Below, piece by piece: positions 7,284 through 59,745 of a stretch of DNA of 64,000 nucleotides. The number at the start of each line of letters is the position of its first letter. Position 1 is the first letter of the stretch. Made by a program: the position numbers and the translations under genes. This stretch comes from Scyliorhinus canicula. Taxonomy: Eukaryota. The notes below the pieces were generated by a model, which saw only the letters and a program-made list of their open reading frames with translations, did no database searches and was not told where the DNA came from. The stretch covers positions 56,034,878 through 56,098,877 of the forward strand of contig NC_052163.1 in NCBI RefSeq assembly GCF_902713615.1, read 5' to 3'.

Positions 7284-10024
7284 TCAATTTAAGGCTCCCC
7301 TCGTGCTAGCCACCTCCATCCGCGGGAGAAGGCTCTCGCTGTCCACCCTATCTAACCCTCTGATCATTTTGTATGCCTCTATTAAGTCACCTCTTAACCT
7401 TCTTCTCTCTAACGAAAACAACCTCAAGTCCATCAGCCTTTCCTCATAAGATTTTCCCTCCATACCAGGCAACATCCTGGTAAATCTCCTCTGCACCCAT
7501 TCCAAAGCTTCCATGTCCTTCCTATAATGAGGCGACCAGAACTGTGCGCAATACTCCAAATGCGGCCGTACTAGAGTTTTGTACAACTGCAACATGACCT
7601 CATGGCCCCGGAACTCAATCCCTCTACCAATAAAGGCCAACACACCATAGGCCTTCTTCACAACCCTATCAACCTGGGTGGCAACTTTCAGGGATCTATG
7701 TACATGGACACCGAGAGCCCTCTGCTCATCCACACTACCAAGAATTTTACCATTAGCCAAATATTCCGCATTCCTGTTATTCTTTCCAAAGTGAATCACC
7801 TCACACTTCTCCACATTAAACTCCATTTGCCACCTCTCAGCCCATCTCTGCAGCTTATCTATGTCTACCTGTAACCTGCAACATCCTTCCGCACTGTCTA
7901 CAACTCCACCGACTTTAGTGTCGTCTGCAAATTTACTCACCCATCCTTCTGCGCCCTCCTCTAGGTCATTTATAAAAATGACAAACAGCAACGGCCCCAG
8001 AACAGATCCTTGTGGTACGCCACTCGTAACTGAACTCCATTCTGAACATTTCCCATCAATTTCCACTCTCTGTCTTCTTTCAACTAGCCAATTTCTGATC
8101 CACATCTCTAAATCACCCTCAATCCCCAGCCTCTGTATTTTCTGCAATAGCCGACCGTGGGGAACCTTATCAAACGCTTTACTGAAATCCAATACACCAC
8201 ATCAACTGCTCTACCCTCGTCTACCTGTTCAGTCACCTTCTCAAAGAACTCGATAAGGTTTGTGAGGCATGACCTACCCTTCACAAAACCATGCTGACCA
8301 TCCCTAATCATATTATTCCTATCTAGATGATTATAAATCGTATCTTTTATAATCCTCTCCAAGACTTTACCCACCACAGACGTTAGGCTCACCGGCCTAT
8401 AGTTACCGGGGTTATCTCTACTCCCCTTCTTGAACAAAGGGACCACATTTGCTATCCTCCAGTCCTCTGGCACTATTCCTGTAGCCAATGATGACCTAAA
8501 AATCAAAGCCAAAGGCTCAGCAATCTCTTCCCTGGCTTCCCAGAGAATCCTAGGATAAATCCCATCCGGCCCCGGGGACTTATCTATTTTCACCTTGTCC
8601 AGAATTGCCAACACTTCTTCCCTACGCACCTCAATGCCATCTATTCTAATAGCCTGGGTCTCAGCATTCTCCTCCACAATATTATCTTTTTCTTGAGTGA
8701 ATACTGACGAAAAGTATTCATTTAGTATCTCGCTTATCTCCTCAGCCTCCACACACAACTTCCCACCACTGTCCTTGACTGGCCCTACTCTTACCCTAGT
8801 CATTCTTTTATTCCTGACATACCTATAGAAAGCTTTTGGGTTTTCCTTGATCCTACCTGCCAAAGACTTCTCATGTCCCCTCCTTGCTCGTCTCAGCTCT
8901 CTCTTTAGATCCTTCCTCGCTTCCTTGTAAATATCAAGCTCCCCAACTGAAACTTCACGCCTCATCTTCACATAGGCCTCCTTCTTCCTCTTAACAAGAG
9001 ATTCCACTTCTTTGGTAAACCACGGTTCCCTCGCTCGACCCCTTCCTCCCTGCCTGACTGGTACGTACTTATCAAGAACATGCAATAGCTGTTCCTTGAA
9101 CAAGCTCCACATATCCAGTGTGCCCAACCCTTGCAGCCTACTTCTCCAACCAACACATCCTAAGTCATGTCTAATGGCATCATAATTGCCCTTCCCCCAG
9201 CTATAACTCTTGCCCTGCGGGGTATACTTATCCCTTTCCATCACTAACGTAAAGGTCACCGAATTGTGGTCACTGTTTCCAAAGTGCTCACCTACCTCCA
9301 GATCTAACACCTGGCCTGGTTCATTACCCAAAACCAAATCCAATGTGGCCTCGCCTCTTGTTGGCCTGTCAACATATTGTGTCAGGAAACCCTCCTGCAC
9401 ACATTGTACAAAGAACGACCCATCTAATGTACTCGAACTATATCATTTCCAGTCAATATTTGGAAAGTTAAAGTCTCCCATAACAACTACCCTGTTACTT
9501 TCGCTCTTTTCCAGAATCATCTTCGCCATCCTTTCCTCTACATCCCTAGAACTATTAGGTGGCCTATAGAAAACTCCCAACAGGGTGACCTCTCCTTTCC
9601 TGTTTCTAACCTCAGCCCATATTACCTCGGAAGAAGAGTCCCCATCTAGCATCCTTTCCGCCACTGTAATACTGTCCTTGACAAGCAGCGCCACACCTCT
9701 CCCTCTTTTGCCCCCTTCTCTGACCTTACTAAAACACCTAAACCCCGGAACCTGCAACAACCATTCCTGTCACTGCTCTATCCATGTCTCTGAAATGGCC
9801 ACAACATCAAAGTCCCAGGTACCAACCCATGCTGCCAGTTCCCCTACCTTATTTCGTATACTCCTGGCATTGAAGTAGACACACTTCAAACCACCTACCT
9901 GAACACTGGCACCCTCCTGCGAAGTCAAATCTGTGCTCCTGACCTCTATACTCTCAATCTCCCGTACCCCAAAACTACAATCCAGGTTCCCATGCCCCTG
10001 CTGAATTAGTTTAAACCCCCCCAA
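7284..10024 (-). pseudogene. CR1 ORF2 endonuclease/reverse transcriptase, with two in-frame stops and one frameshift
   Basis: YFNARSI, ISETW, YRPPN, MGDFNFP, SDHN, KSPGPDG, NYRPVSL, DFSKAFD, GVPQGSVLGP and KFADD across ORFs 9770-10024, 9443-9760, 8108-9400 and 7284-8192. Confidence 0.93.
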
Positions 10025-26599: not shown

Positions 26600-29530
26600 T
26601 CACTGCTGGGCCTCTGGCTTCCTGTTTACTTCCAGAACCTAGAGTCTTGAACAGCTAACAATTGGGAGTTGACTGCTGCCCCATAACTCAATAATGATCT
26701 GCCAGTGCACTGTCAGGGGATGCTGATCCAATGGGACAAAAGGATATCAGATTACTGGGCCATAGCGCTGCTAGAAGTTAAACAATGTACATCCAAGTGA
26801 AATTGTCCTCTTCACTTTGATAGAATGTTTAATTTCCATTGGGCATATAACCTAACTATTACATTGTTGCTGCTTTCGTTGGAAGGATACTGCTGCCTTG
26901 GTCCCCATCTTCTCTCTAGCAGTTCCCATAGATCCTCCTCAAGTTTTTCTTCCAAGGATGTTTTCTTTACCACGCTCTCTCCTTGGTGTCCTTGGATTTT
27001 CATCCCTTATACCAGCAAAACAATGAAAAGCAGTCATGTGTTGAGCGAAATGTAATTCCCATATAAAGCAACGCAATTATTTTTGTGACTTTGTGTCCAA
27101 CAAATGTGGGCCTTCCAGAGTAGGCCCCTGCTCTTGAAAATAGCAGGAATTTGAGCTTACACTTTCAGGATAAATGTACCTGTAATTTAAGAAACTTTCA
27201 GTTCTTATTTTTAAAACCACTACAATTCATGGCTGGAATACCTGGGTTGTCTCTCCTCAAAATCAAGGTAATGAGGAGGACATGGAGTGGAACTCTGATG
27301 ATTGATTCCAGTTCACCTTGTGTAAACAATGACTATTTTATGGCATCACTGGTCCTGGGGGCATTCAGAGAATAGATTTAGCTATAACATTTTCTGGATG
27401 GCTGATCCTTATCTGTATTGATTCAGTGATCTCAGCACATTTGCTCAAGAATGGAAAGGCTCAAAGTGAGAAACAATTACTCAGGATGGAATTAGTCATC
27501 ACATCGAAAAATGTGGGTTGATTAGGAAGAGCCAGCATGGATTTCAAAAGGGGAAATCATGTTTGACTAACTTGCTGGAGATTTTTGAGGAGGTAACAGA
27601 AAGGGTTGATGTGGGTAATGCTGCCCATGTGATGTAAATGGACATTCAGAAAGCATTTGGGACAGTGCCACACAGGGACAATAGCAATGTGGATACAAAA
27701 TTGACTGAATGATAGGAAGCAGAGAGTAATGATCAATGCATATTTTTCAGGCTGGAGGAAGGATTTTAGTGGTGCGCCCCAAGGTTTGGTATTGGGACCC
27801 TTACTTTTCCTGATATATATTTGTGATCTGAACCTCGCTGTGCTGGGAACAATTTCAAAGTTTGCGGATGACACAAAACTTGGAAACATTGCAAGAGGAC
27901 AGTGTAGAATTTCAAAAGGACATAGACAAGTTGGTTGCATGAACGGATAGGTGGCAGATCAAATTCAATGCAGAAAAGTGTGAGGTGATGCATTTTGGTA
28001 GGAAGAACGTGGAGAGTTAATATAAGGGGTAAAATTCTTAAAGAGTGCAGGAGCAGATGAGCCAGTGTGTACATGTATATAGACCATTGAAGATGCCAAG
28101 ATAGGTGAGAATAGTTAATAGAGCATACAGTTTCTGGGTTTTATTATTAGGGCTTAGAGTACAAGAGCAAAGAGGTCATGTTGAACTTATACAAGACACT
28201 AGAGACACCTCAACTGGAGTATTGTGCACAACTCTGGGCGTTACACTGTAGTAAGGATGTGAAAGCATTGGAGAGAGTTCTGAAGAGGTTTACCAGAATG
28301 GTTCCTGAGATGAGAACCTTCAATTACGAGGATAGATTGGAGAGGTTGTTCTCCTTGGAGAGAAGATGGCTAAATGGAGGAGTTGTTAGAAATGTTCAGA
28401 ATCTTGACGGGGCTGGACAGAGTAGATAGAGGGAAATTGTTCCGGCTCAGAAATGGATGAAGGATAAAATATTTAAAGTGATTTGCAAAAGAAGCAAATG
28501 TAAAGTGAGAAAAAAACTTTGAACACAGCGAGATATTCGGGTCTGGAGTGCATTGTCTGGAAGTGTATTGGAGGCAGGTTCAATCAAGGCATTTAGGAGG
28601 GAATGGGATGATTACTTGAATAGAGACAATGTGCAGGTGAAGGCATGGGAATGGCACTAAGTAATGATGCTTATTTGGAGAGCCGGTGAAGTGTTAGGAT
28701 ATGGGACCAGACCCCAGTTTTTGTCAGAACACCAGATGAGAACCCCAAGCATTTTTCAATTTCAAACTGGAAGGAAATGATTCTTCACCCCAGGAGCAAT
28801 GTCTCTGCCCATGAGGAATCTTGTATGTTAAAACAAACTTTAATTTAATCATAACCACATTAACATAAGATAAATAGATTTACAATTAACAGTTTAACAG
28901 TTCTTCAGTAAAAGGAAAGCAAACTTTAACTTATTATCTACATCTACCTCTATATATAATTCAACAAAGAAGCCCAATACAGTACAAAATTCATTCCTAA
29001 ATAAGGTTAGCAACCAGGGTTACTTGTCTATCTGTGCAGATCTTTGGATAACAAGGCACTTTCAGGAACATTCTTAAAATTCTTCTGTCTTGTCCGACTC
29101 AATTCTTAAGGCCAATTACTGTTCAACTTCAAATCTTATAACAGACTGCAAAACTACAGACATACCTGGCTCCTCCCATTAATTATAACATCTGTATCCC
29201 ACTAAGATGTTCTATGACCTGATTAGCTATGGCTGAACACACTCCCTCATAAATCATCTGTACCCCAGAAAATCGGCAGCAATCAAAACAAGATCCCATT
29301 AGCCATCTATATGCAAACAAGTAAATGGTTAGAATCTGTGGTTACTTCACCTTATACAACTTGTTAATCACAGCTTTTGTAGGCACTGCCTTATGCATTT
29401 GAACCCAGGGTTTTTAATAACATTATTGCAACAAAATATACAATGTAATGTATAACAATGTCTACATTCATCACAGCAGACATGATGGGCCACATGGGTT
29501 CCTTCTGCACTGTAGCAATTCTATGATTCT
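26600..29530 (+). mobile_element. Old CR1 LINE (RT and 3' end clear from 27430; upstream part fragmentary), with a solo LTR in its 3'UTR
   Basis: SGAPQGLVLGPLLFLIYI, SKFADDTKL, LYKTL..PQLEYCAQLW; the tail resumes at 29476 (GATGGGCC...TTCTATGATTCT). Confidence 0.8.
28692..29475. mobile_element. Solo LTR
   Basis: TGTTAG...CATCACA ends; imperfect 4-bp TSD GAAG/GCAG; splits the CR1 3'UTR. Confidence 0.75.
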
Positions 29531-31527: not shown

Positions 31528-32382
31528 GGATTTCCATATACCTAGCCTTGAGTGTTAAAAGAAGGCAGCTCCATTACATACTATTGATGTCTTCACCCAG
31601 AGAGTGGTGTAACTCGTTACCACGAGGAGTAGTAGAGACACAGTTAAGAGGAAGCTGAGTAAAAACATAAATGAGAAAGTAATAGGAAATTATGTTGATT
31701 GATGAAAAGGGTAGGAAGAGGCTCGCATGGAACAGTGACACCATTGTGACCCCAACAGCCCACATTTATATGGAACATTTAACAAAATTCCAGGCTGCTC
31801 AGCAAGACTGGTATCAATATAAATGTTTTTGACATTTTTGCTACTGGCACCACAGAAAGATGAGGACAGATACCAAACAATTTGATCAAAGATGTAAGTT
31901 ATTTTTGGCTATTTTAAAAGAGCAGCGAGGGAGAGAGAGGGACAGAGGGGTGCAGAAGTTTGGGGAGGAAATTCTTGAGCTTAGGAATGAGGCATCTGAA
32001 AACAACAACAATGGAAAGAATAAAACCCAGAATGAACAGGAATCAGAATTGAAGGAAAGCAGCAGTGTCGGCAGGGCTGGGGAATGCTACGTTGGTAAGT
32101 ATGAGATTTGAAAATAATGATGAGGATTTTTAAACTGATGCATTGCTGGAAGGGGTGCGAGTGAAAGTCAGCAATTGCATGAATGACAGGTGAATGAGAT
32201 TTGGACTGAGTTATGCTCCTGGGAGCAGAGTTTTGGACAAGCACTGTAGTAATCCACGGTTGGCAGAAGTTCCGTCACCACACCAATATTTATTTACAAT
32301 AACAATATTACAGGAGCAGCTACAAACAGTGCTGCTAGCAGTCCACTCAACTTAAGACTGCTCACAAAGCCTACACAGGTGA

Positions 32383-35300
32383 TTATATGGGCCCCCTCAA
32401 TGAGCTATCATTGAGGGAGCTCATACTCCAATTGGCCAACCAATAAAGCCAATTGGAGTTCATTACACCCCTCCCCCCAAGGTCCAAGGAATTCCTGCCA
32501 GCTGGAATTCCTCTGAGCTTCTTCCTGCTCCTCATGTCTGGGTCTGTCATCTCTGTGTCGTCCGCCGGGTCGTTCCCCGAAGTGGGCGGGGTGTACCTTA
32601 TAGGTGCCCGTCTTTTCCTTGACGACCTCCTTGGAAGTTGTTCTTCCTCCTCCTCGGGGAGAGGTGTCGCGGCGGCCTCGTCAAGTGTGTCCATCTCCGA
32701 CTCTGATGACTGGATGACGGGGTCTGGAGAAATTACTCGGGGCTGGGGTGTGGGTATCCTTTCCGTCTGGGCTATCCCAGCTTGAGGCGGTCCTGCTTCG
32801 CCTGCCTCCAGGTGTGGTTCCGCTACCCTTATTTGGTCTAGGTGTTTCTTCAGCACCTTACCTCCTATTGAAACCTCATAGGATATGGGCCCTGTTTGGG
32901 ACTCTACCGTGCCTTTGACCCATGTTGGTCCATTCCCATAATTCTTGACCCAAACCTGTGCCCCCACCTGGAAATGTCTCTGCTGCCGACTATTATCATG
33001 CCCCCTGCGCTGGGCCTCCTGTTGTTTCTCCACTTTCCCCGTAAAATTTGGGAAAAGGAGACTCAGCCTCGTTCGCAGCCGTCTTCCCATTAAGAGTTCA
33101 GCTGGCGGTATGCCTGTTGTGGAATGCGGTGTGGTCTATAATCAAACAGCCAGCGGGAGAGCTTTGTGTCTATTGACGCTGCCGGCTGCTTCTTGAGTCC
33201 CGCTTTAAGTGTCTGGACCGCTCTCTCTGCCAGGCCGTTGGTCGCTGGATGGTAAGGGGCCGTTTTGATGTGACGGACTCCGTTTTCCTTCAGGAATTTT
33301 CCAAATTCCCCACTTGTGAATGCCGTTCCGTTGTCCGACACCAATACCTCCGGAAGTCCATGTGTTGCAAACGAGGCCCTGAGCTTTTCAATTGTCGATG
33401 CTGTGCTTGCCGGTTTTACCCGGTGGACGTCCAACCATTTGGAGTGGGTGTCCACTATCACCAAAAACACTGAGCCCATGAAAGGGCCGGCATGGTCAAT
33501 ATGCAGGCGGGTCCACGGTCTGCCTGGCCATTCCTACGGGTGCAATGGTGCCGCTGGTGGCACTCTTTGCCCCTGTTGGCACTCCTGGCACCGACGTACC
33601 AAGGCTGCTATGTCTGTGTCCAAACCTGGCCACCAAGCGTAGCTTCGAGCTAGCATCTTCATTTTAGACACCCCTGGGTGTCCGTGATGTAACTCAGTTA
33701 AGATTGCCTGACGGCCCTGAGCTGGGACGATTACCCGGGCTTCCCATAATAGGATACCGTCTTTTACAGTTATTTGGTCCCTTCTGCTCCAGTATGGGTG
33801 CATCTGGGGCTCCACTGGTCTTTCCAGTTCCCCTGTTAGCAGTAAATGCTTCATCTTGGCTAAAACTGGGTCTTTTTGCATCCACAACCGAATATGTTGT
33901 GCGTCTACTGGTAGGGTGTCCAAATAATTTAGAGTCATTACTGTCTCCTCTACTTTTGGTATTTGCGGCGGAGTGTCCGGGAGGGGAAGTCTGCTCAAAG
34001 CATCTGCATGTGCTACTCGTGTTCCCGGTCTGTGCTCCAGAACGTATCTATATGCCGCCAGTAGCAACGCCCAGCATTGGATTCTAGCTGATGCAATCGG
34101 GGGTGTTGACTTGTCTTCTTTTAATAACCCTAATAACGGCTTATGGTCCGTCACTATGGTGAATTTCCGCCCATACAGATACTGGTGAAATTTTGTTTAC
34201 TGCGAATATCACTGCCAGTCCTTCCTTCTCGATTTGGGCGTACTTCCTCTCAGCCATCGCCAAGGTCCTCGAAGCATAGGCTATTGGCCGTTCTTCCCCA
34301 TTCCTTCCTCTATGGGCTAAGATGGCTCCTACCCTGTAGGGGGATGCATCACAAGTGACCACCAACTCCTTCCTTGGGTCATAATGCTCTAGGATATTTT
34401 CGGATGACAGCTGTTCCTTAATGTCCCTAAATGCTTGGTTTTGGCGGGTGGACTATTTCCATTCTTGCCCCTTTTTTAGTAGCTGGTGGAGGGGTTCTAG
34501 GATGGATGCCCTATTTTCAATAAATTTTCCATAATAGGTTACCAACCCTAGAAATGATCGTAACTCCTGGACCGTGGTGGGAGCTGGGGCTTCTTTTATT
34601 GCCCTTACTCTGTCTTCTAATGGGTGTAAGCCTGACTTGTCTACTTTGTATCCCAGGTACGTCACCTGTGGGGCCAGAAAAACACATTTTTCCTTTTTTA
34701 GCCGTACGCCTGCCTTTGCGAAACGCCTGAGCACTTCCTCCAGGTTCCTTAAGTGTTCCCTGTTTGTCCTACCCGTGATTAAGACATCGTCCAAATAAAT
34801 CGCCACCTGCGGTAGTCCCTGCAGAATATTTTCCATCGTACGCTGGAATATAGCGCAGGCTGATGACACTCCAAAAGGTAGCCTAGTATAACGAAAAAGG
34901 CCCTTCAGGGTGTTGATCGTAGCGAACTTCTGGGAGCCCTTGTCCAGTTTTAACTGCAGGTAGGCGTGGCTCATGTCTAGTTTCGTGAACAAAAGCCCAC
35001 CTGCCAATTTGGCATATAGGTCGTCTATTTTCAGGATTGGGTATTTGTCCAGCAGTGCGTATTTGTTTACTGTCTGTTTGAAATCTCCACAGAGACGTAT
35101 CGAGCCGTCTGGCTTCAAAATTGGTACCACCGGCGCTGCCCATTCCGAGAACTGTATTGGTCTGATAATGCCGTCGCGCCGTAACCTTTCTATTTCGTCA
35201 TCTACTTTCTTCCTTAATGCAAAAGGTACCGGCCTGGCCTTACAAAATTTCGGAAGGGCTTCTGGGTCCACGTGCAAAGTTGCTTTGGCACCTATGATTT

Positions 35301-35709
35301 CCCCCAAACCTTCCTGGAAGACCTCCGGGTATTTTTGGAGTACTCCACTCAACTGCCCGCTTCCACTCTGGAAAATTTTCATCCAATCTAATTTCAGGTC
35401 TTTCAGCCAGTTCCGTCCAATTAAGCTCGGTCCGGAGCCCTCTACTATCGTCAATGGTAATCTGAGCAATTGTTTCTCATATTCCACAGGTACATGAGTC
35501 GTGCCTAGAACTTCCAGGGGTTCACCCGTGTAGGTTTTAAGTTTCGTCGATGTTTTTGTTAGGGTTAGTGGCTGGAGTCCATCTTTGATTTTTCTAAATG
35601 CTGCCACTCCCATTACTGATACGGCTGCACCCGTGTCTATTTCCATTATTGTCGGCCGCCCGTTCACCCGTGGGGTAATCCTAATGGGTTCTGCTTTCTT
35701 CGTTGTAAT
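32383..35709 (-). pseudogene. Gypsy pol (protease-RT-RNase H-integrase) with several stops and frameshifts
   Basis: EIDTGAAVS, RLPFGVSSA, IYLDDVLI, CDASPY, TDHKPL, ELHHGHPG...RCQEC, VSDNG, PYHPATNGLAERAV, GPISY. Confidence 0.93.
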
Positions 35710-35807
35710 ACATAAAAATAGATAAAAGAATATGAATACATTTTAGCTCACATTTTATTCACACATTAAGTTATGAAAAAAGTTTAATATATTTGAAGAA
35801 AATTCTT

Positions 35808-37215
35808 TTATGACAAATTGCGTGCAATATTTCTTAAAAATTGCAGAGCGTTTTCAGATTGATAATTCTCAACTAGATTCTTTATTCGTGCATCAATCAT
35901 TTGATAGGACTTTTTTTTTGTTGTCGAGTCCCCACGTCGAATGTGCACAATTTTCGTCTGGCTTAAGCCTTCTTCAGTCTTAAGGGCATTGCAAAGTTTC
36001 CACAAATTTGGATGTGTGGATGTTATCGATGACCGTAAAGCATTGTGGAACCCTTCTACCGAATTATTTGCTCTTGGCAAGTCATTTAAAACGCGGTCAC
36101 GCACATTCCAGAGTTGGATAGGAAACTGCGGGGTTTCTCTTCGTCGACGAAGACCGCGTCCCTTTACAGTCCCAATGTACGAATTCTCAAAATAAGTGAT
36201 AAACTCAGAAGGGATGCTTTCATCATCAGACAAATCTTCAAATCCATTGACAACGTCTTCAATTGGTAAAAATGCTAAAGCGCAAAAACACTTAATTTTA
36301 AGCTTAAAACTTTCATCCGTGTTGTATCTCCTACTCTCACCAAGTGCACATATCTTCCGCCAAATAGACTGTCCGAGATGAAAAACACACCCAACTACTT
36401 CTAAATGCGGAAATACAGAAACAAATGAATTATGGCGAGCTTTTTCAAAGTCCGTGAGACAGGTCGCAGGTCGACAATTTGCCCTTAAATCCCGCACAGT
36501 AGACAGAAGACTATGATATGAGGCTTCTTTTTTGTCAGGAAGTAAGGCAAATAGCCTGGGCACACATGACCCTCCAATGATGATATGTAGCGTGAAAAGT
36601 TGACACCACAAACTAGGAGACACCTTAAAAGTCCCATCACAGGCCCAATTTTCAGAGCTTTCGAGATCATCCAAGCCTTTTTCTGAAGAAAAAACTAAAA
36701 TTCTGTCTGGGTCATCAAGTCCACTGTTAAAGACCAAAAACAAGGACCCATTTTCTAAGTACTTAACTGTATCAGGGATTTGAAACCCTGACCGACAAGT
36801 TGGAAGTGCTGGGATTCCTAAAGCATGCTGCCTCCAGTTACGTACGTGAAAGTCCAGGAATAGTTTGCAACAATGATTGTGCTTCCTCATCGAGATTTTG
36901 TACAGCAGTAGCTATTACTTCCCGTGAAGATACTATGCCCGTTATCATTACTACACTTTTCATTGAATTAACTGCCTTTCGGGCATTAACGTGTGCACTG
37001 CTTGCTGAGTGATTATGGGAGGCCGTTGAAAAAATAACTTCTGGTATACTGGAGTTGAAAGTTGTATGTAGTCTAGCCCGGCAACCTTTGTAAAAACGCT
37101 CACAACGCCAATATATTTTTGTTTTGCTACTGTTAACTCCATTCTTTTTGTATATATGATTCTCTATGTCGCAAAGCTTAAGTTTGTTCTTCTCTGATGT
37201 TATAAATGTTGCCAT
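35808..37215 (-). pseudogene. FLYWCH zinc finger + MULE DDE transposase, about 470 aa, one frameshift near 36845
   Basis: N-terminal HIYKKN...IYWRCE..YKGCRARLHT...SHNH; catalytic WACDGTFK, CLTDFEKA, GCVFHLGQSIWRK (CxxH) and RANNSVEGFHN motifs all intact; ORFs 36838-37215 and 35808-36890 overlap at LSRT/VRNW. Confidence 0.88.
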
Positions 37216-37384
37216 GGTTGAGGGTTTAAAAGTTCAAAGTTAAACTGAATAGAAAAAAGTAGTAGCACCAGTGAAATTAGTTTTTTATAGACCATTTACT
37301 AATTAGTTAAGAAGGGTGTAACAAGTAGTTTAGTTTTTTATAGACCATTTACTAACGACTAATTAGTTAAGAAGTGTGTCCACC

Positions 37385-37504
37385 ATTTACTGTAGTGGAA
37401 TTTACCTCAGTGGAATATACCGCAGTGAAATCTACCTATAGTGAAATTTTCCGAGTGGAATTTACCGTAGTGGAATTTACCTTAGTGGAATTTACCGGTC
37501 ACCG
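37385..37504. repeat. About 8 tandem copies of a 15-bp unit AGTGGAATTTACCNN forming the MULE terminus
   Basis: Directly visible, ending in ...TTACCGGTCACCG; a duplicated block of about 45 bp lies upstream (37278-37320 and 37330-37378). Confidence 0.85.
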
Positions 37505-37894
37505 GTCCCGAAGCATTTCATTTAGTGTCGGGCCAAACTCACATTTTTCCGCCAGCCTTCTCAGGCGGGTCAAGAAATTTTTGACTGACTCCCTGTCTTC
37601 CCGCTTTGCGGTGTAGAATCTATACCTACGCAAAATGAGGGGTGGTTTTGGGTCACAGTGCTCTTTCACCAATTCCGTTACTTCTTGGAAAGTTTTCGTG
37701 TCCGGCGCATCGGGATAAGTCAGACTACGTATAATGGTGAAGGCGGAGGGTCCGCACGCCGACAGCAGGATAAGCCGTCTCCTTTAGTCCGTCAGTATAT
37801 CATTTGCCAGGAAGAAGTAACACATTCTCTCCACATACTGGGACCAGTCCTCAATAGCCGGGTCGAATGCCTCTAACCTCCCAAAAAACGGCAT
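37505..37894 (-). pseudogene. Gypsy gag N-terminal half
   Basis: MPFFGRLEAFDPAIEDWSQY..., LRRYRFYTAKREDRESVKNFLTRLRRLAEKCEFGPTLNEMLRD. Confidence 0.85.
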
Positions 37895-38915
37895 TTTTAA
37901 AATGGCAAGGCTTACCCTCCGAGTGCGGCAGCTGGTCTCCGCAAAATTCGTAGTTTACCTCGTCGCCACTGTAGTAATCCACGGGAGGAAGGAGTTCCGT
38001 CACCACACCAATATTTATTTACAATAGCGATATTACAGGAGCAGCTACAAAACAGTGCTGCTAGCAGTCCAGTCAACTTAAGACTGCTCACAAAGCCTAC
38101 ACAGGTGATTATATGGGCCCCCTCAATGAGCTATCATTGAGGGAGCACATACTCCAATTGGCCAACCAATAAAGCCAATTGGAGTTCATTACAAGCACAA
38201 AGAGGCGGATTTACAATTAATCACACTATGCCTCAGCATGGGGCCCTGACAAATTAGGGAGGGAGGTGTGTAAGTGTGTGTGTGTGGGGGGGGGGGGGGG
38301 GGATTCGATACACAGGGCATCCAATCAGAGGCTGATTGCTCAGCATTTGCTGATAGGGTCAACAAATACAAATCAACTGCAAATGCAAATCGAAATTAGA
38401 CTGTGAATGGTGACTCTGAAAGATCAGGAAAACTATTAACGAATGTTTAACTTGAGCCCGCGAGACAACAAGAGGCGAGGAACAGGCTGCCGAGGTTTGT
38501 GAATCTAGCTATGAGGAATTGAACAGGTGGCAGTTTTGTGCTGGGTGCCGACACTAGCAGACCCAGGCTAGCAACAGCAACAGACAGATGAGGCGCAACA
38601 CCCTGAAACAAGCCACAAGGAGTCGGCAAGCAGAGGAATGACCAAGGCCAGTAACAGGTACGTGACAACACCCCAAGGTGAGGGAGAGGCATGGCGGCCA
38701 CGTTCAGTGAGGCAGGATGCCGTGAGGTTCCCAGGCGAGTGAGATGAGTGAGAATGGCAGAATGTGAGGGGAGGGTGCAGACTATGAGGGGATGGGGGTG
38801 GTGGGATAGAGAGTGAGGATGTGGGGGGAGGGAGTGTGTTTAATTTTGTGAGGAAGAAGAAAGAAGGAAGTTAACCTTTATTTTTGAAAGTCTGTAACAT
38901 ATACTGAATGGCAAC

Positions 38916-39909: not shown

Positions 39910-40255
39910 CAGTGCATGCATTTTGTTGATTGGAGTATTTGTTCCTGCACTGGCCTGGCTCATTCTGGTCCTGCATTGGCCTGCGCTGCAGTGATGTCAT
40001 TGGTTGATTGTTCCATCTCATTGCTCATCAACAAGTTCCAAGTTTGCTCACCTCAGGACTCGCACACCGCAAAATCGGCCATCTTTACCGCCATTCTGAC
40101 AAGAGGTAAGCTTGGATTTCATATCAGCAATTATTCATATAGGCGTGTTTTTGCAAGTAAAAAAGTTGTGATAAATTTGTGAATTTTTCTGGCTTCCGTA
40201 TTTGCATTCCGTGGGATGAGAGTGGGTGGGGTCAGGAGGGACATGAGATTGGGGG

Positions 40256-40289
<34 letters not shown>

Positions 40290-56619: not shown

Positions 56620-57455
56620 TAGAACATAGAACATAGAACACTACAGCTCAGTACGGGCCCTTCGGCCCTCGATGTTGCGCCGACCTGTGAAACCATCTGA
56701 AGCCTATCTGACCTACACTATTCCATTTTCATCCATATGTCTATCCAGTGACCACTTAAATGCCCTTAAAGTTGGCGAGTCTACTACTATTGCAGGCAGG
56801 GCGTTCCACACCCCTACTACTCTCTGAATAAAGAAACTGCCTCTGACATCTGTCCTATATCTATCACCCCTCAATTTAAAGCTATGTCCCCTCGTGTTGG
56901 TCATCACCATCCGAGGAAAAACTCTCACTGTCCACCCTATTTAACCCTCTGACTATCTTATATGTCTCTATTAAATCACCTCTCAGCCTTCTCCTCTCTA
57001 ACGAAAACAACCTCAATTCCCTGAGCCTTTCCTCGTAAGACCTTCCCTCCATACCAGGCAACATCCTAGTAAATCTCCTCTGAACCCTTTCCAAAGCTTC
57101 CACATCCTTCCTATAATGTGGTGACCAGAACTGCACGCAGTACTCCAGGTGCGGCCGCACCAGAGTTATGTATAGCTGCAGCATGACCTTGTGGTTCCGA
57201 AACTCAATCCCCCTGCTTATAAAGGCTAGCACACCATATGCCTTCTTAACAGCCCTATTAACCTGGGTGGCAACTTTCAGGGATTTATGTACCTGGATGC
57301 CGAGATCTCTCTGTTCATCTACACTACCAAGAATCTTGCCATTAGCCCAGTACTCTGCATTCCTGTTACTCCTTCCAAAGTGAACCACCTCACACTTTTC
57401 CGCATTAAACTCCATCTGCCACCTCTCAGCCCAGCTCTGCAGCTTATCTATGTCA
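56620..57455 (-). mobile_element. Young 5'-truncated CR1/HER1
   Basis: MEFNAEKCEV...RPHLEYCVQFWSP; (TAGAACA)3 tail; probable TSD GCAGAT. Confidence 0.9.
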
Positions 57456-57594
57456 TGGCAGATCTTCTATTAGGCGCCATCTGACGACTCTATCCTCATA
57501 TTCCTGAATATCTTTACCATCCATAAATATATCAATCTCTGTCTTGAATATACTCAATGACTGAGCCTCCACAGCCATTTGGTGTAAAGAATTC

Positions 57595-57800
57595 TGTTAT
57601 ATTCACAATGTGTCGCAAAGAGAAAAGGTATGGAGGTGACACGTACCTGAATTTCTGACAAATACGCTGCGAGGTTGACTCGGAGAGGTTGTTCAAACAA
57701 TACTAAGATGGAGAACTGAAGCCCACACAAACACTCTGCTGACGTCACTACAGATCATGTGACATTCCACCAGCAGGGATGTATTCTTTAATACATAACA
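57595..57800. mobile_element. 206-bp solo LTR
   Basis: TGTTAT...ATAACA ends; TSD AATTC (57590-57594, 57801-57805). Confidence 0.85.
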
Positions 57801-58139
57801 AATTCCAAAGAATCATCAGCCCCTGACTAAAGCAATTCCTCCTCATTTCAGTCCTAAATGGTTTACCACCTACTCTGAGACTGTGCCCGTTGTTCTAGAC
57901 CCACCCTTTCCAGGGGAAACATCCTTCCTGCATCAACACTGTTGAGCCCTCTAATAAATTGGTACACTTTCATGAGATCACCTCCCATTCTTCTGAAGTT
58001 TAGAGAACACAGGCCCAGTATTCGCAATCCCGCCTCATAGGACAACCCCGCCACCCCAAGAATCAGTTCGGTGAACCTACTTTGCACTTCCTCTATGGCA
58101 AGTACATCCTTCCTGAGGGAATGATAACAAAATGATAAC

Positions 58140-59745
58140 AATATTTACAAATGAGAGGGGCCATATTGTTGGAGAGGACAGTGTGAAACAGACTGGTAAG
58201 CTCGAGGAGATACTTGTTCGGAAGGAAGATGTGTTGGGAATTTTGAAAAACTTGAGGATAGACAAGTCCCCCGGGCCTGACGGGATATATCCAAAGATTC
58301 TATGGGAGGCAAGAAATGAAATTGCAGAGCCGTTGGCAATGATCTTTTCATCCTCGCTGTCAACAGGGGTGGTACCAGAGGATTGGAGAGTGGCGAATGT
58401 CGTGCCCCTGTTCAAAAAAGGGAATCGGGATAACCCTGGGAATTACAGGCCAGTTAGTCTTACTTCGGTGATAGACAAAGTAACGGAAAGGGTACTGAGG
58501 GATAGTATTTCTGAGCATCTGGAAAGACACTGCTTGATAGGGATAGTCAGCACGGATTTGTGAGGGGTAGGTCTTGCCTTACAAGTCTTATTGACTTCTT
58601 TGAGGAGGTGACCAAGCATGTGGATGAAGGCAAAGCAGTGGATGTGGTGTACGTGGATTTTAGTAATGCATTTGATAAGGTTCCCCATGGTAGGCTTATG
58701 CAGAAAGTAAGGAGGCATGGGATAGTGGGAAATTTGGTCAGTTGGATAACAAACTGGCTAACCGATAGATGACAGAGAGTGGTGGAGGATGGCAAACATT
58801 CAGCCTGGAGCCCAGTTACCAGTGGCATACCACAGGGATCAGTTCTGGGTCCTCTGCTGTTTGTGATTTTCATTAACGACTTGGATGAGGGAGTTGAAGG
58901 GTGGGTCAGTAAATTTGCAGATGATACGAAGATTGGTGGAGTTGTGGATAGTGAGGAGGGCTGTTGTCGGCTTCAAAGAGACATAGATAGGATGCAGAGC
59001 TGGGCTGAGAAGTGGCAGATGGAGTTTAACCCTGACAAGTGTGAGGTTGTCCATTTTGGAAGGACAAATATGAATGCGGAATACAGGGTTAACGGTAGGG
59101 TTCTTGGCAATGTAGAGGAGCAGAGAGATCTTGGGGTCTATGTTCATAGATCTTTGAAAGTTGCCACTCAAGTGGATAGAGCTGTGAAGAAGGCCTATGG
59201 TGTGCTAGCGTTCATTAGCAGAGGGATTGAATTTAAGAGTTGTGAGGTGATGATGCAGCTGTACAAAACCTTGGTCAGGCCACATTTGGAGTACTGTGTG
59301 CAGTTCTGGTCACCTCATTTTAGGAAGGATGTGGAAGCTTTGGAAAAGGTGCAAAGGAGATTTACCAGGATGTTGCCTGGAATGGAGAGTAGGTCTTACG
59401 AGGAAAGGTTGAGGGTGTGCTAGGCCTTTTCTCATTAGAACGGAGAAGGATGAGGGGCGACTTGATAGAGATTTATAAGATGATCAGGGGAATAGATAGA
59501 GTAGACAGTCAGAGACTTTTTCCCCGGGTGGAACACACCATTACAAGGGGACATAAATTTAAGATAAATGGTGGAAGATATAGGGGGGATGTCAGAGGTA
59601 GGTTCTTTACCCAGAGAGTAGTGGGGGCATGGAATGCACTGCATGTGGAAGTAGTTGATTCGGAAACGTTAGGGACCTTCAAGCGGCTATTGGATAGGTA
59701 CATGGATTAGGGTAGAATAATGGAGTGTAGATTAATTTCTTCTTA
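58140..59745 (+). mobile_element. Young CR1/HER1 ORF2 RT fragment, disabled
   Basis: KSPGPDG, NYRPVSL, DFSNAFD, GIPQGSVLGP, KFADD, FFTQRVVGAWNAL. Confidence 0.92.

What the first reader, a model, noticed from the sequence alone, without database searches (positions are those of the whole stretch)
35710..37504. Nearly intact Phantom-like FLYWCH-MULE transposase occupying the gag C-terminus of a young Gypsy
Seen: an AT-rich, intronless block encodes about 470 aa with a FLYWCH-type finger and intact D (CDGTF), D (TDFE), CxxH and E (NNSVEG) motifs, broken by a single frameshift. It is co-oriented with the Gypsy and joins gag at ...MLRD and protease at ITTKKAEP, so the gag C-terminal half with its zinc knuckle is gone. 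Only one MULE terminus survives, and an AATAAA lies about 45 nt before the other junction. Known: FLYWCH+MULE elements with tandem-repeat termini (Phantom group) are typical of invertebrates and uncommon as young transposons in vertebrates. Inference: recent MULE activity in a shark, possibly by horizontal transfer; alternatively a chimeric Gypsy that ferries a DNA transposase as cargo.
Basis: partly seen in the sequence, partly recalled or inferred. Interest (0 to 1): 0.8.

Follow-up and report, generated by a model that had tools for sequence, protein, structure and literature searches.

The report
Truncated MULE transposon inside dead Gypsy
A cut-and-paste (Mutator-type) transposon jumped into an already resident Gypsy retrotransposon, and one later deletion removed its far end together with the neighbouring part of the Gypsy gag gene; the nesting is ordinary, but the transposon family is unusual for a vertebrate and looks horizontally acquired.

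Summary
On the minus strand, 35711-37503 is a FLYWCH+MULE transposon copy with all catalytic motifs and one frame break. It sits inside a Ty3/Gypsy element that has 224-bp LTRs and a 5-bp target duplication.

The 5' end of the MULE is an exact transposon terminus. Its 3' end stops roughly 150-300 bp short of where family copies continue. About 145-180 codons of Gypsy gag, including the zinc knuckles, are missing at the same joint, which shows a 2-nt microhomology.

The best reading is one transposition into a resident Gypsy followed by one deletion across the MULE's 3' end. The retro-mobilised cargo reading gets no support:
- The MULE has only about 4-7 single-copy equivalents of read depth.
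- That depth is fully taken up by copies with their own 3' end.
- RNA coverage stops at the joint.

The Gypsy is not young. Its LTRs are 96% alike and its ORFs carry at least five lesions.

The horizontal-transfer idea is partly supported. The shark element sits in a tight clade with Octopus bimaculoides (80% aa) inside a crustacean/mollusc group.

The scan had already noted this MULE family at several other places in this genome. Public-run contigs could not independently confirm the two joints.

The parts
37970..38193 (-). Gypsy 5' LTR (TG..CA, 224 bp)
   Evidence: Direct repeat with 32245-32467, 96% identical. It starts TGTAATG and ends ACTACA.
38194..38198 (-). Target-site duplication GTGCT, upstream copy (the downstream copy is at 32240-32244)
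   Evidence: Read directly from the sequence on both sides of the LTR pair.
37504..37894 (-). Gypsy gag N-terminal remnant (ATG at 37894). It has an in-frame stop at 37786-37784 that the bulk of family contigs do not share.
   Evidence: The piece 37502-37783 matches residues about 39-132 of more than 1,000 gag or gag-pol proteins at E<=1e-10. At 37786 all family contigs carry another letter.
37385..37503 (-). MULE 5' terminus (GGTGACCGGTAAATTCC...) followed by 7.5 copies of a 15-bp tandem repeat. The first GGT (37503-37501) is shared with the Gypsy sequence, so the joint is ambiguous by 3 nt.
   Evidence: TRF finds period 15, 7.5 copies. The terminus matches 16 of 17 bases of a full-length relative, L003, which is bounded by an 8-bp TSD.
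37216..37384 (-). MULE 5' subterminal region with two direct repeats (37277-37302 with 37330-37355, and 37298-37319 with 37358-37379)
   Evidence: the repeat finder families D6 and D7.
36841..37215 (-). Transposase N-terminal ORF with the FLYWCH zinc finger (YWRC, CRARLH, HNH)
   Evidence: Pfam PF04500, E 6.4e-12. It aligns to the N-termini of 466-477-aa homologues.
36841..36845 (-). The single frame break of the transposase
   Evidence: tblastn with full-length homologues switches frame here. Family contigs in three runs differ in length by 5 nt at 36842.
35808..36845 (-). Transposase catalytic part (MULE domain; D85, D147, C168-x2-H171, W261 and E279 in ORF numbering) with its stop codon
   Evidence: Pfam PF10551, E 2.9e-10. 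Motif positions. 58% identity over 96% of the ORF to the 474-aa protein P0001.
35711..35807 (-). Remnant of the MULE 3' UTR with AATAAA at 35759-35754. The element is cut off here.
   Evidence: Family contigs run on with other letters beyond about 35709-35711 (table 5c). The relative L003 has a further 45 nt or so plus an inverted repeat array of about 105 nt after the homologous point.
35709..35711 (.). Deletion joint between the MULE 3' UTR and the Gypsy sequence just upstream of the protease. TA at 35709-35710 is shared by both parents.
   Evidence: Gypsy contigs fit up to 35710 and then diverge. MULE contigs fit from 35709 (tables 5c and 7).
32468..35710 (-). Gypsy pol remnant (PR-RT 34456-35710, RNase H and integrase 32468-34455), broken by at least 2 in-frame stops and 2 frame changes
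   Evidence: Pfam finds gag-asp_proteas, RVT_1, Integrase_H2C2 and rve. ORF frames.
32245..32467 (-). Gypsy 3' LTR

Best explanation
A FLYWCH-MULE (Phantom-type Mutator) DNA transposon inserted by ordinary transposase-mediated integration into the gag gene of a Ty3/Gypsy copy that already lay at this chromosomal site. A single deletion later spanned the MULE's 3' terminus. It may have started from a break at that terminus, for example one-ended cleavage during attempted excision, followed by resection and end joining. The deletion removed about 150-300 bp of the MULE 3' end (the inverted tandem-repeat array and one copy of the target duplication) and about 430-540 bp of Gypsy gag, including its CCHC knuckles. 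The ends were rejoined on a 2-nt microhomology.

The result is an immobile relic. The MULE has one end only and a frame-shifted transposase. The Gypsy lacks nucleocapsid and carries stops and frameshifts.

Separately, the MULE family as a whole is low-copy and little diverged in this cartilaginous-fish genome. It most likely entered the lineage by horizontal transfer from, or through, marine invertebrates.

Shown: the domains, the motifs, the exact 5' terminus, the truncation point, the missing gag interval, the copy-depth contrast and the tree position.
Inferred: the order of events, the break-at-terminus mechanism and the horizontal transfer.
For: (1) Domains and motifs.

(2) Exact 5' terminus. 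The element here begins GGTGACCGGTAAATTCC. The full-length relative in L003 begins GGTGACCAGTAAATTCC directly after an 8-bp TSD (GTGGAAAC) and has inverted 15-bp repeat arrays at both ends. An exact terminus is the signature of transposition.

(3) Truncation at the 3' end. MULE-family contigs in two DNA runs run on past 35709-35711 with other letters (table 5c). L003 shows that the repeat array lies downstream of the homologous point.

(4) Gypsy breakpoints. Thousands-fold-deep Gypsy contigs diverge at exactly 37501 and 35710 (table 7). TA is shared at the deletion joint.

(5) Missing interval. Intact relatives have 144-179 aa with CCHC knuckles there.

(6) Single-locus chimera.
- MULE depth is 29.6 and 52.7, against 6,000-30,000 for the Gypsy interior and about 7.8 for a single-copy flank contig.
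- Contigs with the native 3' continuation have depth 33 and 81+14, which accounts for all of the MULE depth.
- No other Gypsy-MULE chimera appears among the scan's notes for this genome.

(7) Relative age. This copy differs from the family contigs by 1.2% (16/1374 and 19/1556). The LTR pair differs by 3.6%, or 1.8% per branch. This is compatible with the MULE arriving after the Gypsy integrated.

(8) Horizontal transfer.
- The nearest rows are Octopus bimaculoides (80-85% aa) and unnamed ENA contigs (78-84% nt).
- The five-row clade has SH-aLRT 99 and is nested among sea lice and a crab. The only other vertebrate row, a caecilian, is distant.
- MULE GC is 38% and CpG o/e 0.79, against 46% and 0.49 for the window.
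Against: - The two joints were not confirmed independently. Only 1 of 4 sampled words around 35710 is held by any run's contigs, and exact-ORF look-ups were blank. Contigs drop rare variants, so this proves nothing either way.
- The age comparison is not significant. Eight LTR substitutions give a per-branch interval of roughly 0.8-3.5%, which includes 1.2%.
- The 3' TSD copy is gone, so the insertion cannot be proven by a TSD at this locus.
- The host organisms of the closest unnamed relatives could not be identified. A chondrichthyan origin for them, and therefore partly vertical descent, is not excluded.
- The identification as a shark rests on the scan's notes, not on a test made here.
Confidence: 0.75

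Rival explanations
1. Retro-mobilised chimera. The Gypsy-MULE fusion formed elsewhere and was copied to this site through RNA, with gag and nucleocapsid supplied in trans by the very abundant family. The MULE would then be cargo of a non-autonomous Gypsy.
For: - The two elements are co-oriented.
- The LTRs and TSD are complete, so the element as a whole looks like a retrotransposition product.
- The Gypsy family is extremely abundant and is present in RNA runs, so helper proteins exist.
- The age estimates overlap.
Against: - MULE depth equals only a few single-copy equivalents, and copies that keep their own 3' end take up all of it.
- No junction words are held in any run's contigs.
- In a polyA RNA run, depth falls from about 17-28 in gag to about 0.2 inside the MULE.
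- No second chimera appears in the scan's notes.
- LTR divergence is nominally greater than the MULE's private divergence.
Confidence: 0.08
2. Two unrelated events. This Gypsy copy already lacked its gag 3' half (an internally deleted, non-autonomous variant), or lost it in a separate deletion. The MULE arrived already 3'-truncated, or lost its end independently.
For: Internally deleted LTR elements are common. One X1 contig shows another internal deletion in the family, skipping 529 nt between 35091 and 35621 (table 5).
Against: It needs two or three events where one is enough. The missing Gypsy interval starts exactly at the MULE insertion point and the missing MULE part ends exactly at the Gypsy resumption point, which is what a single deletion across the 3' terminus predicts. 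A MULE lacking one terminus could not have integrated by normal transposition.
Confidence: 0.1
3. Assembly artefact. A MULE copy and a Gypsy copy were joined wrongly at one or both joints.
For: The Gypsy is a very high-copy repeat. The joints are not represented in public-run contigs.
Against: - One joint is an exact transposon terminus.
- The other shares only 2 nt. Assemblers mis-join across long shared repeats, not across 2 nt.
- The MULE body carries private differences from the family contigs throughout, as expected for one real copy.
- The LTR pair and its TSD frame the whole structure consistently.
Confidence: 0.05
4. Retro-capture of a MULE transcript by template switching during Gypsy reverse transcription. 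This is the reading suggested by the AATAAA 43 nt before the joint.
For: An AATAAA lies near the 3' joint, the elements are co-oriented, and the block has no introns.
Against: - The block starts at the very first base of the transposon terminus and includes the whole terminal repeat array, which lies upstream of any plausible transcript start.
- There is no poly(A) at the joint.
- Family copies and the relative L003 continue with ordinary element sequence after the same AATAAA.
Confidence: 0.02

Closest known systems
Phantom subclass of Mutator-like elements (FLYWCH + MULE transposase), including Muta1 of Aedes aegypti
   Same: - N-terminal FLYWCH finger followed by a MULE DDE domain, with about 470 aa in a single intronless ORF.
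- DDE triad, a C-x2-H motif 21 residues after the second D, and a W before the E, as described for MULEs and Muta1 (PMC5499845).
- Relatives include Lepeophtheirus, a host already listed for MULEs (PMC6446971).
   Different: The host is a vertebrate. A 2019 survey found no credible MULE transposase in vertebrates and asked whether they are really absent (PMC6446971). Placement against the canonical Phantom reference sequences was not tested here. This copy has one end only.
Tm1 Mutator/Foldback elements of root-knot nematodes
   Same: Termini are built from a short unique outer motif followed by a variable array of 13-15-bp tandem repeats. The transposase is Phantom-type, of about 470-500 aa (PMC3169594). 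Here there is a 15-bp array of 7.5 copies behind GGTGACC.
   Different: Tm1 mostly makes 9-bp TSDs. The close relative L003 shows 8 bp. The repeat unit shows no sequence similarity to Tm1's, and the host phylum differs.
Nested TE insertions with adjacent deletion (DNA transposon inside an LTR retrotransposon)
   Same: A DNA transposon sits inside an older LTR element, with a deletion that runs from inside the transposon into the flank and is closed on microhomology. Follow-up reports of this scan describe other DNA transposons nested in Gypsy gag in this genome (s1-249153).
   Different: Nothing essential. Co-orientation and the near-complete transposase make it look like a designed chimera, but no feature requires that.
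Retroviral or LTR-element transduction of foreign genes
   Same: Foreign coding sequence replaces part of gag between two LTRs, in the same orientation.
   Different: Transduced genes are spliced or processed cellular sequences joined by recombination. Here the insert begins at an exact transposon terminus, keeps its non-coding terminal repeats, and shows no sign of being multi-copy.

Membership tests
Mutator-like element (MULE) superfamily | MULE-type DDE transposase domain | tested here: met
   PF10551, E 2.9e-10, 40.9 bits against a cut-off of 27.6. 105 homologues with MULE domains.
Mutator-like element (MULE) superfamily | D, D, E triad with a (C/D)x2H motif 15-45 aa after the second D and a W before the E (PMC5499845) | tested here: met
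   D85, D147, C168-x2-H171 (21 aa after D147), W261 and E279. The same columns are conserved in the alignment of homologues.
Mutator-like element (MULE) superfamily | Terminal inverted repeats at both ends | tested here: not met
   Only the 5' repeat array (37385-37503) exists, with no inverted partner in the window. The relative L003 has both, so the lack here is a truncation of this copy and not a property of the family.
Mutator-like element (MULE) superfamily | 8-10 bp target-site duplication | not testable with these tools
   The 3' flank of the insertion is deleted at this locus. The full-length relative L003 has an 8-bp TSD, GTGGAAAC.
Phantom subclass | N-terminal FLYWCH zinc finger fused to the MULE domain | tested here: met
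   PF04500, E 6.4e-12, at residues 4-69 of the first ORF. The ORFs are co-linear with FLYWCH+MULE homologues.
Phantom subclass | Grouping with canonical Phantom/Muta references in a transposase tree (group 20 of PMC6446971) | not tested
The tree holds only database hits.
Ty3/Gypsy LTR retrotransposon (the host element) | LTR pair with a short TSD, and pol order PR-RT-RH-IN | tested here: met
   224-bp LTRs at 96% identity with TSD GTGCT. gag-asp_proteas, RVT_1, Integrase_H2C2 and rve occur in that order.
Ty3/Gypsy LTR retrotransposon (the host element) | Complete gag with a CCHC nucleocapsid knuckle, and open gag-pol frames (autonomy) | tested here: not met
   The knuckle region is absent. gag has a stop at 37786-37784, and pol is split into five ORFs.
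Retro-mobilised (transducing) LTR chimera | The same internal junctions at several loci with different TSDs | tested here: inconclusive
   No whole-genome search was possible. Depth accounting, the junction-word search and the scan's notes give no sign of further copies.

The most novel reading that the evidence does not exclude
The MULE family to which this relic belongs is a recently and horizontally acquired DNA transposon in a cartilaginous fish, possibly still mobile, and shared at about 80% protein identity with a cephalopod. That would make it one of the first credible autonomous Mutator-type transposons in a vertebrate. This locus would then record one of its jumps, plus a transposase-induced flanking deletion.
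Probability: 0.35. Interest if true: 0.7.

Novelty: new member of a known kind. Interest (0 to 1): 0.4.

Why it matters
The chimera itself matters little. It is a dead, single-locus product of nesting plus deletion, a common way for TE-rich genomes to build mosaic repeats, and it should not be annotated as a new element type or as a transposase-carrying Gypsy.

The family behind it matters more. A 2019 survey of MULE diversity found no convincing MULE transposase in vertebrates and listed their apparent absence as an open question (PMC6446971). Here a complete FLYWCH-MULE reading frame, with every catalytic residue, sits in a vertebrate genome. It is about 98.8% identical to other copies and low in copy number. 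Its nearest relatives are in an octopus and in crustaceans, including fish ectoparasites. That makes horizontal transfer of DNA transposons between marine invertebrates and cartilaginous fishes directly testable. This locus also supplies a dated insertion, bracketed by the LTR divergence of its host element.

Tried and rejected
- **Junction word search.** A 60-nt query around 35710 had too few indexed words. An 80-nt query showed that only 1 of 4 words is held, most likely the Gypsy-only word. The joint is therefore neither confirmed nor refuted.
- **Exact-product look-ups.** The 360-aa ORF and an 80-aa plus-strand ORF that spans the 5' joint are not on record.
- **Host of the closest unnamed relatives** (ERZ25072293, ERZ17174954, GCA_041156885.1):
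  - Neighbouring CR1-like RT and a 952-aa ORF gave only unnamed ENA hits or distant bird, turtle and crayfish hits.
  - The accession numbers appear in no held paper.
  - The flanks of L003 share only about 65% nt identity with LINE fragments of the window. That organism is therefore not a close relative of the source, but its phylum stays unknown.
- **Gypsy consensus.** I built none. The size of the missing gag part was taken from six natural, intact, related polyproteins instead.
- **Poly(A)/retrocopy reading.** Considered and rejected for the AATAAA near the joint.
- **The tandem GACCGGT GACCGGT at the 5' joint.** Considered as a possible TSD or microhomology signal and rejected. It arises because the transposon terminus GGTGACCGGT abuts the target ...GGGACC, and the relative L003 carries the same terminus.
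- **Literature.** Searches found no paper in the held library on MULEs in cartilaginous fishes.
Full report
**What is there**

All features lie on the minus strand.
- A Ty3/Gypsy element spans 38193 to 32245.
- Its LTRs (38193-37970 and 32467-32245) are 224 and 223 bp and differ by 8 substitutions and one 1-nt indel.
- The element is flanked by the 5-bp duplication GTGCT.
- Pfam finds an aspartic protease, RVT_1, Integrase_H2C2 and rve in the usual order downstream of 35710.
- Upstream, an ATG at 37894 opens a gag frame. This frame carries an in-frame stop at 37786-37784 and ends at the MULE joint.
- The pol region is split into five ORFs by at least two in-frame stops and two frame changes.

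This Gypsy copy is therefore dead and only moderately recent, not young.

**The insert**

The insert lies between 37503 and 35711 and has 38% G+C, against 50% for the Gypsy and 46% for the window.
- Pfam places a FLYWCH finger in 36841-37215 (E 6e-12) and a MULE transposase domain in 35811-36890 (E 3e-10).
- Aligned with homologues of 466-477 aa, the two ORFs cover the whole protein with one frame change near 36841-36845 and no stop.
They fall in conserved columns, as described for MULEs (PMC5499845).

**The ends of the insert**

The 5' end carries 7.5 copies of a 15-bp tandem repeat (37385-37497) behind the outermost bases GGTGACC.

A full-length relative was found on an ENA metagenome contig (L003, 78% nt and 80% aa identity).
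- It starts GGTGACCAGTAAATTCC, 16 of 17 bases identical to the start here.
- It has the same kind of 15-bp array at both ends in inverted orientation.
- It is bounded by an 8-bp duplication, GTGGAAAC.

The 5' joint here is therefore an exact transposon terminus, which points to integration by a transposase. The apparent doubling GACCGGT-GACCGGT is the terminus abutting a target that happens to end in GGGACC. Three bases (GGT) fit either parent.

This architecture, a short outer motif plus a 13-15-bp repeat array with a Phantom-type transposase, is the one described for Tm1 in root-knot nematodes (PMC3169594).

The 3' end is missing.
- No inverted copy of the repeat array exists in the window.
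- In L003 the point homologous to 35711 lies about 45 nt before the 3' array.
- Other copies of the family in this genome were sampled as contigs of two DNA runs. They run on past 35709-35711 with letters that are neither Gypsy nor this locus (table 5c).
- The AATAAA at 35759-35754 is part of the normal 3' UTR. L003 has the same motif well inside its element.
- There is no poly(A) at the joint.

**The Gypsy breakpoints**

The Gypsy family is enormous in the runs, with word depth of 6,000-30,000 in the interior and more than 100,000 in the LTR. Its contigs fit the window up to 37501 on one side and up to 35710 on the other, and then continue with other sequence.
- Beyond 37501 that sequence reads, in the gag frame, RDRLVCGINDLTIQ.
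- Before 35710 it reads ...EGEQLYN, ahead of ITTKKAEP (table 7).

I searched the 94-residue gag piece against 1.8 billion representatives and located both the gag piece and the PR-RT ORF on six natural intact polyproteins. In these, 144-179 residues lie between the two points, and they contain one or two CCHC knuckles. About 430-540 bp of Gypsy are therefore missing.

At the 3' joint, the dinucleotide TA (35709-35710) belongs to both the MULE continuation and the Gypsy continuation. This is a 2-nt microhomology typical of end joining.

**Most likely history**

One transposition of a complete MULE into gag at about 37503 was followed by one deletion that straddles the MULE's 3' terminus. This accounts for every feature.

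Because the deletion is centred on the transposon end, a transposase-made break at that end is a plausible trigger. That step is inference.

**Tests of the cargo idea**

If the chimera had been copied through RNA, its junctions and the MULE body would be multi-copy. The evidence points the other way:
- MULE depth is 29.6 in X1 and 52.7 in X5, against about 7.8 for a single-copy flank contig in X1. That is a handful of copies.
- The MULE contigs differ from this copy at 16-19 positions per 1.4-1.6 kb.
- Contigs with the native 3' continuation have depths of 33 and 81+14, which uses up all of the MULE depth.
- In a polyA RNA run, gag is covered at about 17-28 but the adjoining MULE bins at about 0.2. 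The few MULE reads carry the letters of other copies.
- The scan's notes for 1,351 windows of this genome list several other FLYWCH-MULE copies of 2.0-2.4 kb but no second Gypsy-MULE chimera.
- The MULE's private divergence (1.2%) is nominally below the per-branch LTR divergence (1.8%), as expected if it arrived after the Gypsy. With only eight LTR substitutions the difference is not significant.

One caveat remains. I could not confirm the joints independently. Junction words are not held in public-run contigs, which drop rare branches, and exact-product look-ups were blank. I consider a misassembly unlikely, because one joint is an exact terminus and the other shares only 2 nt.

**The family and horizontal transfer**

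The catalytic ORF finds 105 relatives.
- The nearest named one is Octopus bimaculoides, at 80-85% identity over the parts it covers.
- Unnamed ENA contigs reach 78-84% nucleotide identity.
- In a maximum-likelihood tree of 64 rows, the shark sequence has a short end branch (0.068). It sits in a five-row clade (SH-aLRT 99) with the octopus and those contigs.
- That clade lies inside a 17-row clade (SH-aLRT 100) holding the sea lice Caligus and Lepeophtheirus and a cluster that includes a crab protein.
- The only other vertebrate row, a caecilian, lies far away next to a firefly.
- The MULE is much more AT-rich and less CpG-depleted than its surroundings.
- The family contigs in two DNA runs differ from this copy in length by 5 nt exactly at the frame break and are otherwise co-linear through the coding part. 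The break is therefore private to this copy, and the family may retain open frames.

This pattern fits horizontal acquisition and fairly recent activity. It is notable because a broad survey could not find credible MULE transposases in vertebrates (PMC6446971).

It is not proof:
- The hosts of the closest contigs could not be identified.
- No chondrichthyan or cephalopod genomes could be searched.
- The shark identity of the window rests on the scan's notes.

**Verdict**

- The 'young Gypsy' and 'cargo' parts of the interpretation are not supported.
- The 'recent MULE activity, possibly horizontal' part is supported at the level of phylogenetic placement and low divergence.
- The locus is an ordinary nested relic of an unusual family, which the scan had already seen elsewhere in this genome.

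Noticed in passing
L003:7147-9345: A full-length relative of the shark MULE, about 2.2 kb, on an ENA metagenome contig (ERZ25072293). It has an 8-bp TSD (GTGGAAAC) and inverted 15-bp tandem-repeat arrays at both ends. Its 3' UTR contains an internal duplication of about 120 nt (8940-9060 against 9070-9180). It is itself inserted next to CR1-like reverse-transcriptase genes. The host organism is unknown.
   Followed up: partly
window 34900-35710 and 37501-38193: The Gypsy family is extraordinarily abundant in all runs of the organism: word depth is 6,000-30,000 in the interior and over 100,000 in the LTR. It is also well represented in RNA libraries. One word of it is held by a run labelled as a different species (organism B), so the family is shared beyond this species.
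   Followed up: no
window 38250-38310 and 40223-40288: Two G-rich, poly-G tracts (17 and about 30 consecutive G) with GT/GA-rich surroundings lie just outside the 5' LTR and 2 kb further on. Reads appear cut there.
   Followed up: no
window 7638-8621, 27458-28026, 57200-59520: CR1-like LINE reverse-transcriptase fragments, about 50% aa and 65% nt identical to the RT next to the MULE in L003.
   Followed up: no
window 35091-35621: One contig of run X1 joins 35091 to 35621, skipping 529 nt of PR-RT. At least one internally deleted Gypsy variant therefore exists in the genome (table 5).
   Followed up: no
window 35826-37374: A 1,555-nt MULE contig (depth 8.6) is present in a small run guessed to be RNA (X9), and a few polyA RNA reads (X24) lie on the MULE. 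All carry the letters of other copies, not this one. This hints at low-level transcription of the family, but genomic DNA carry-over is not excluded.
   Followed up: partly
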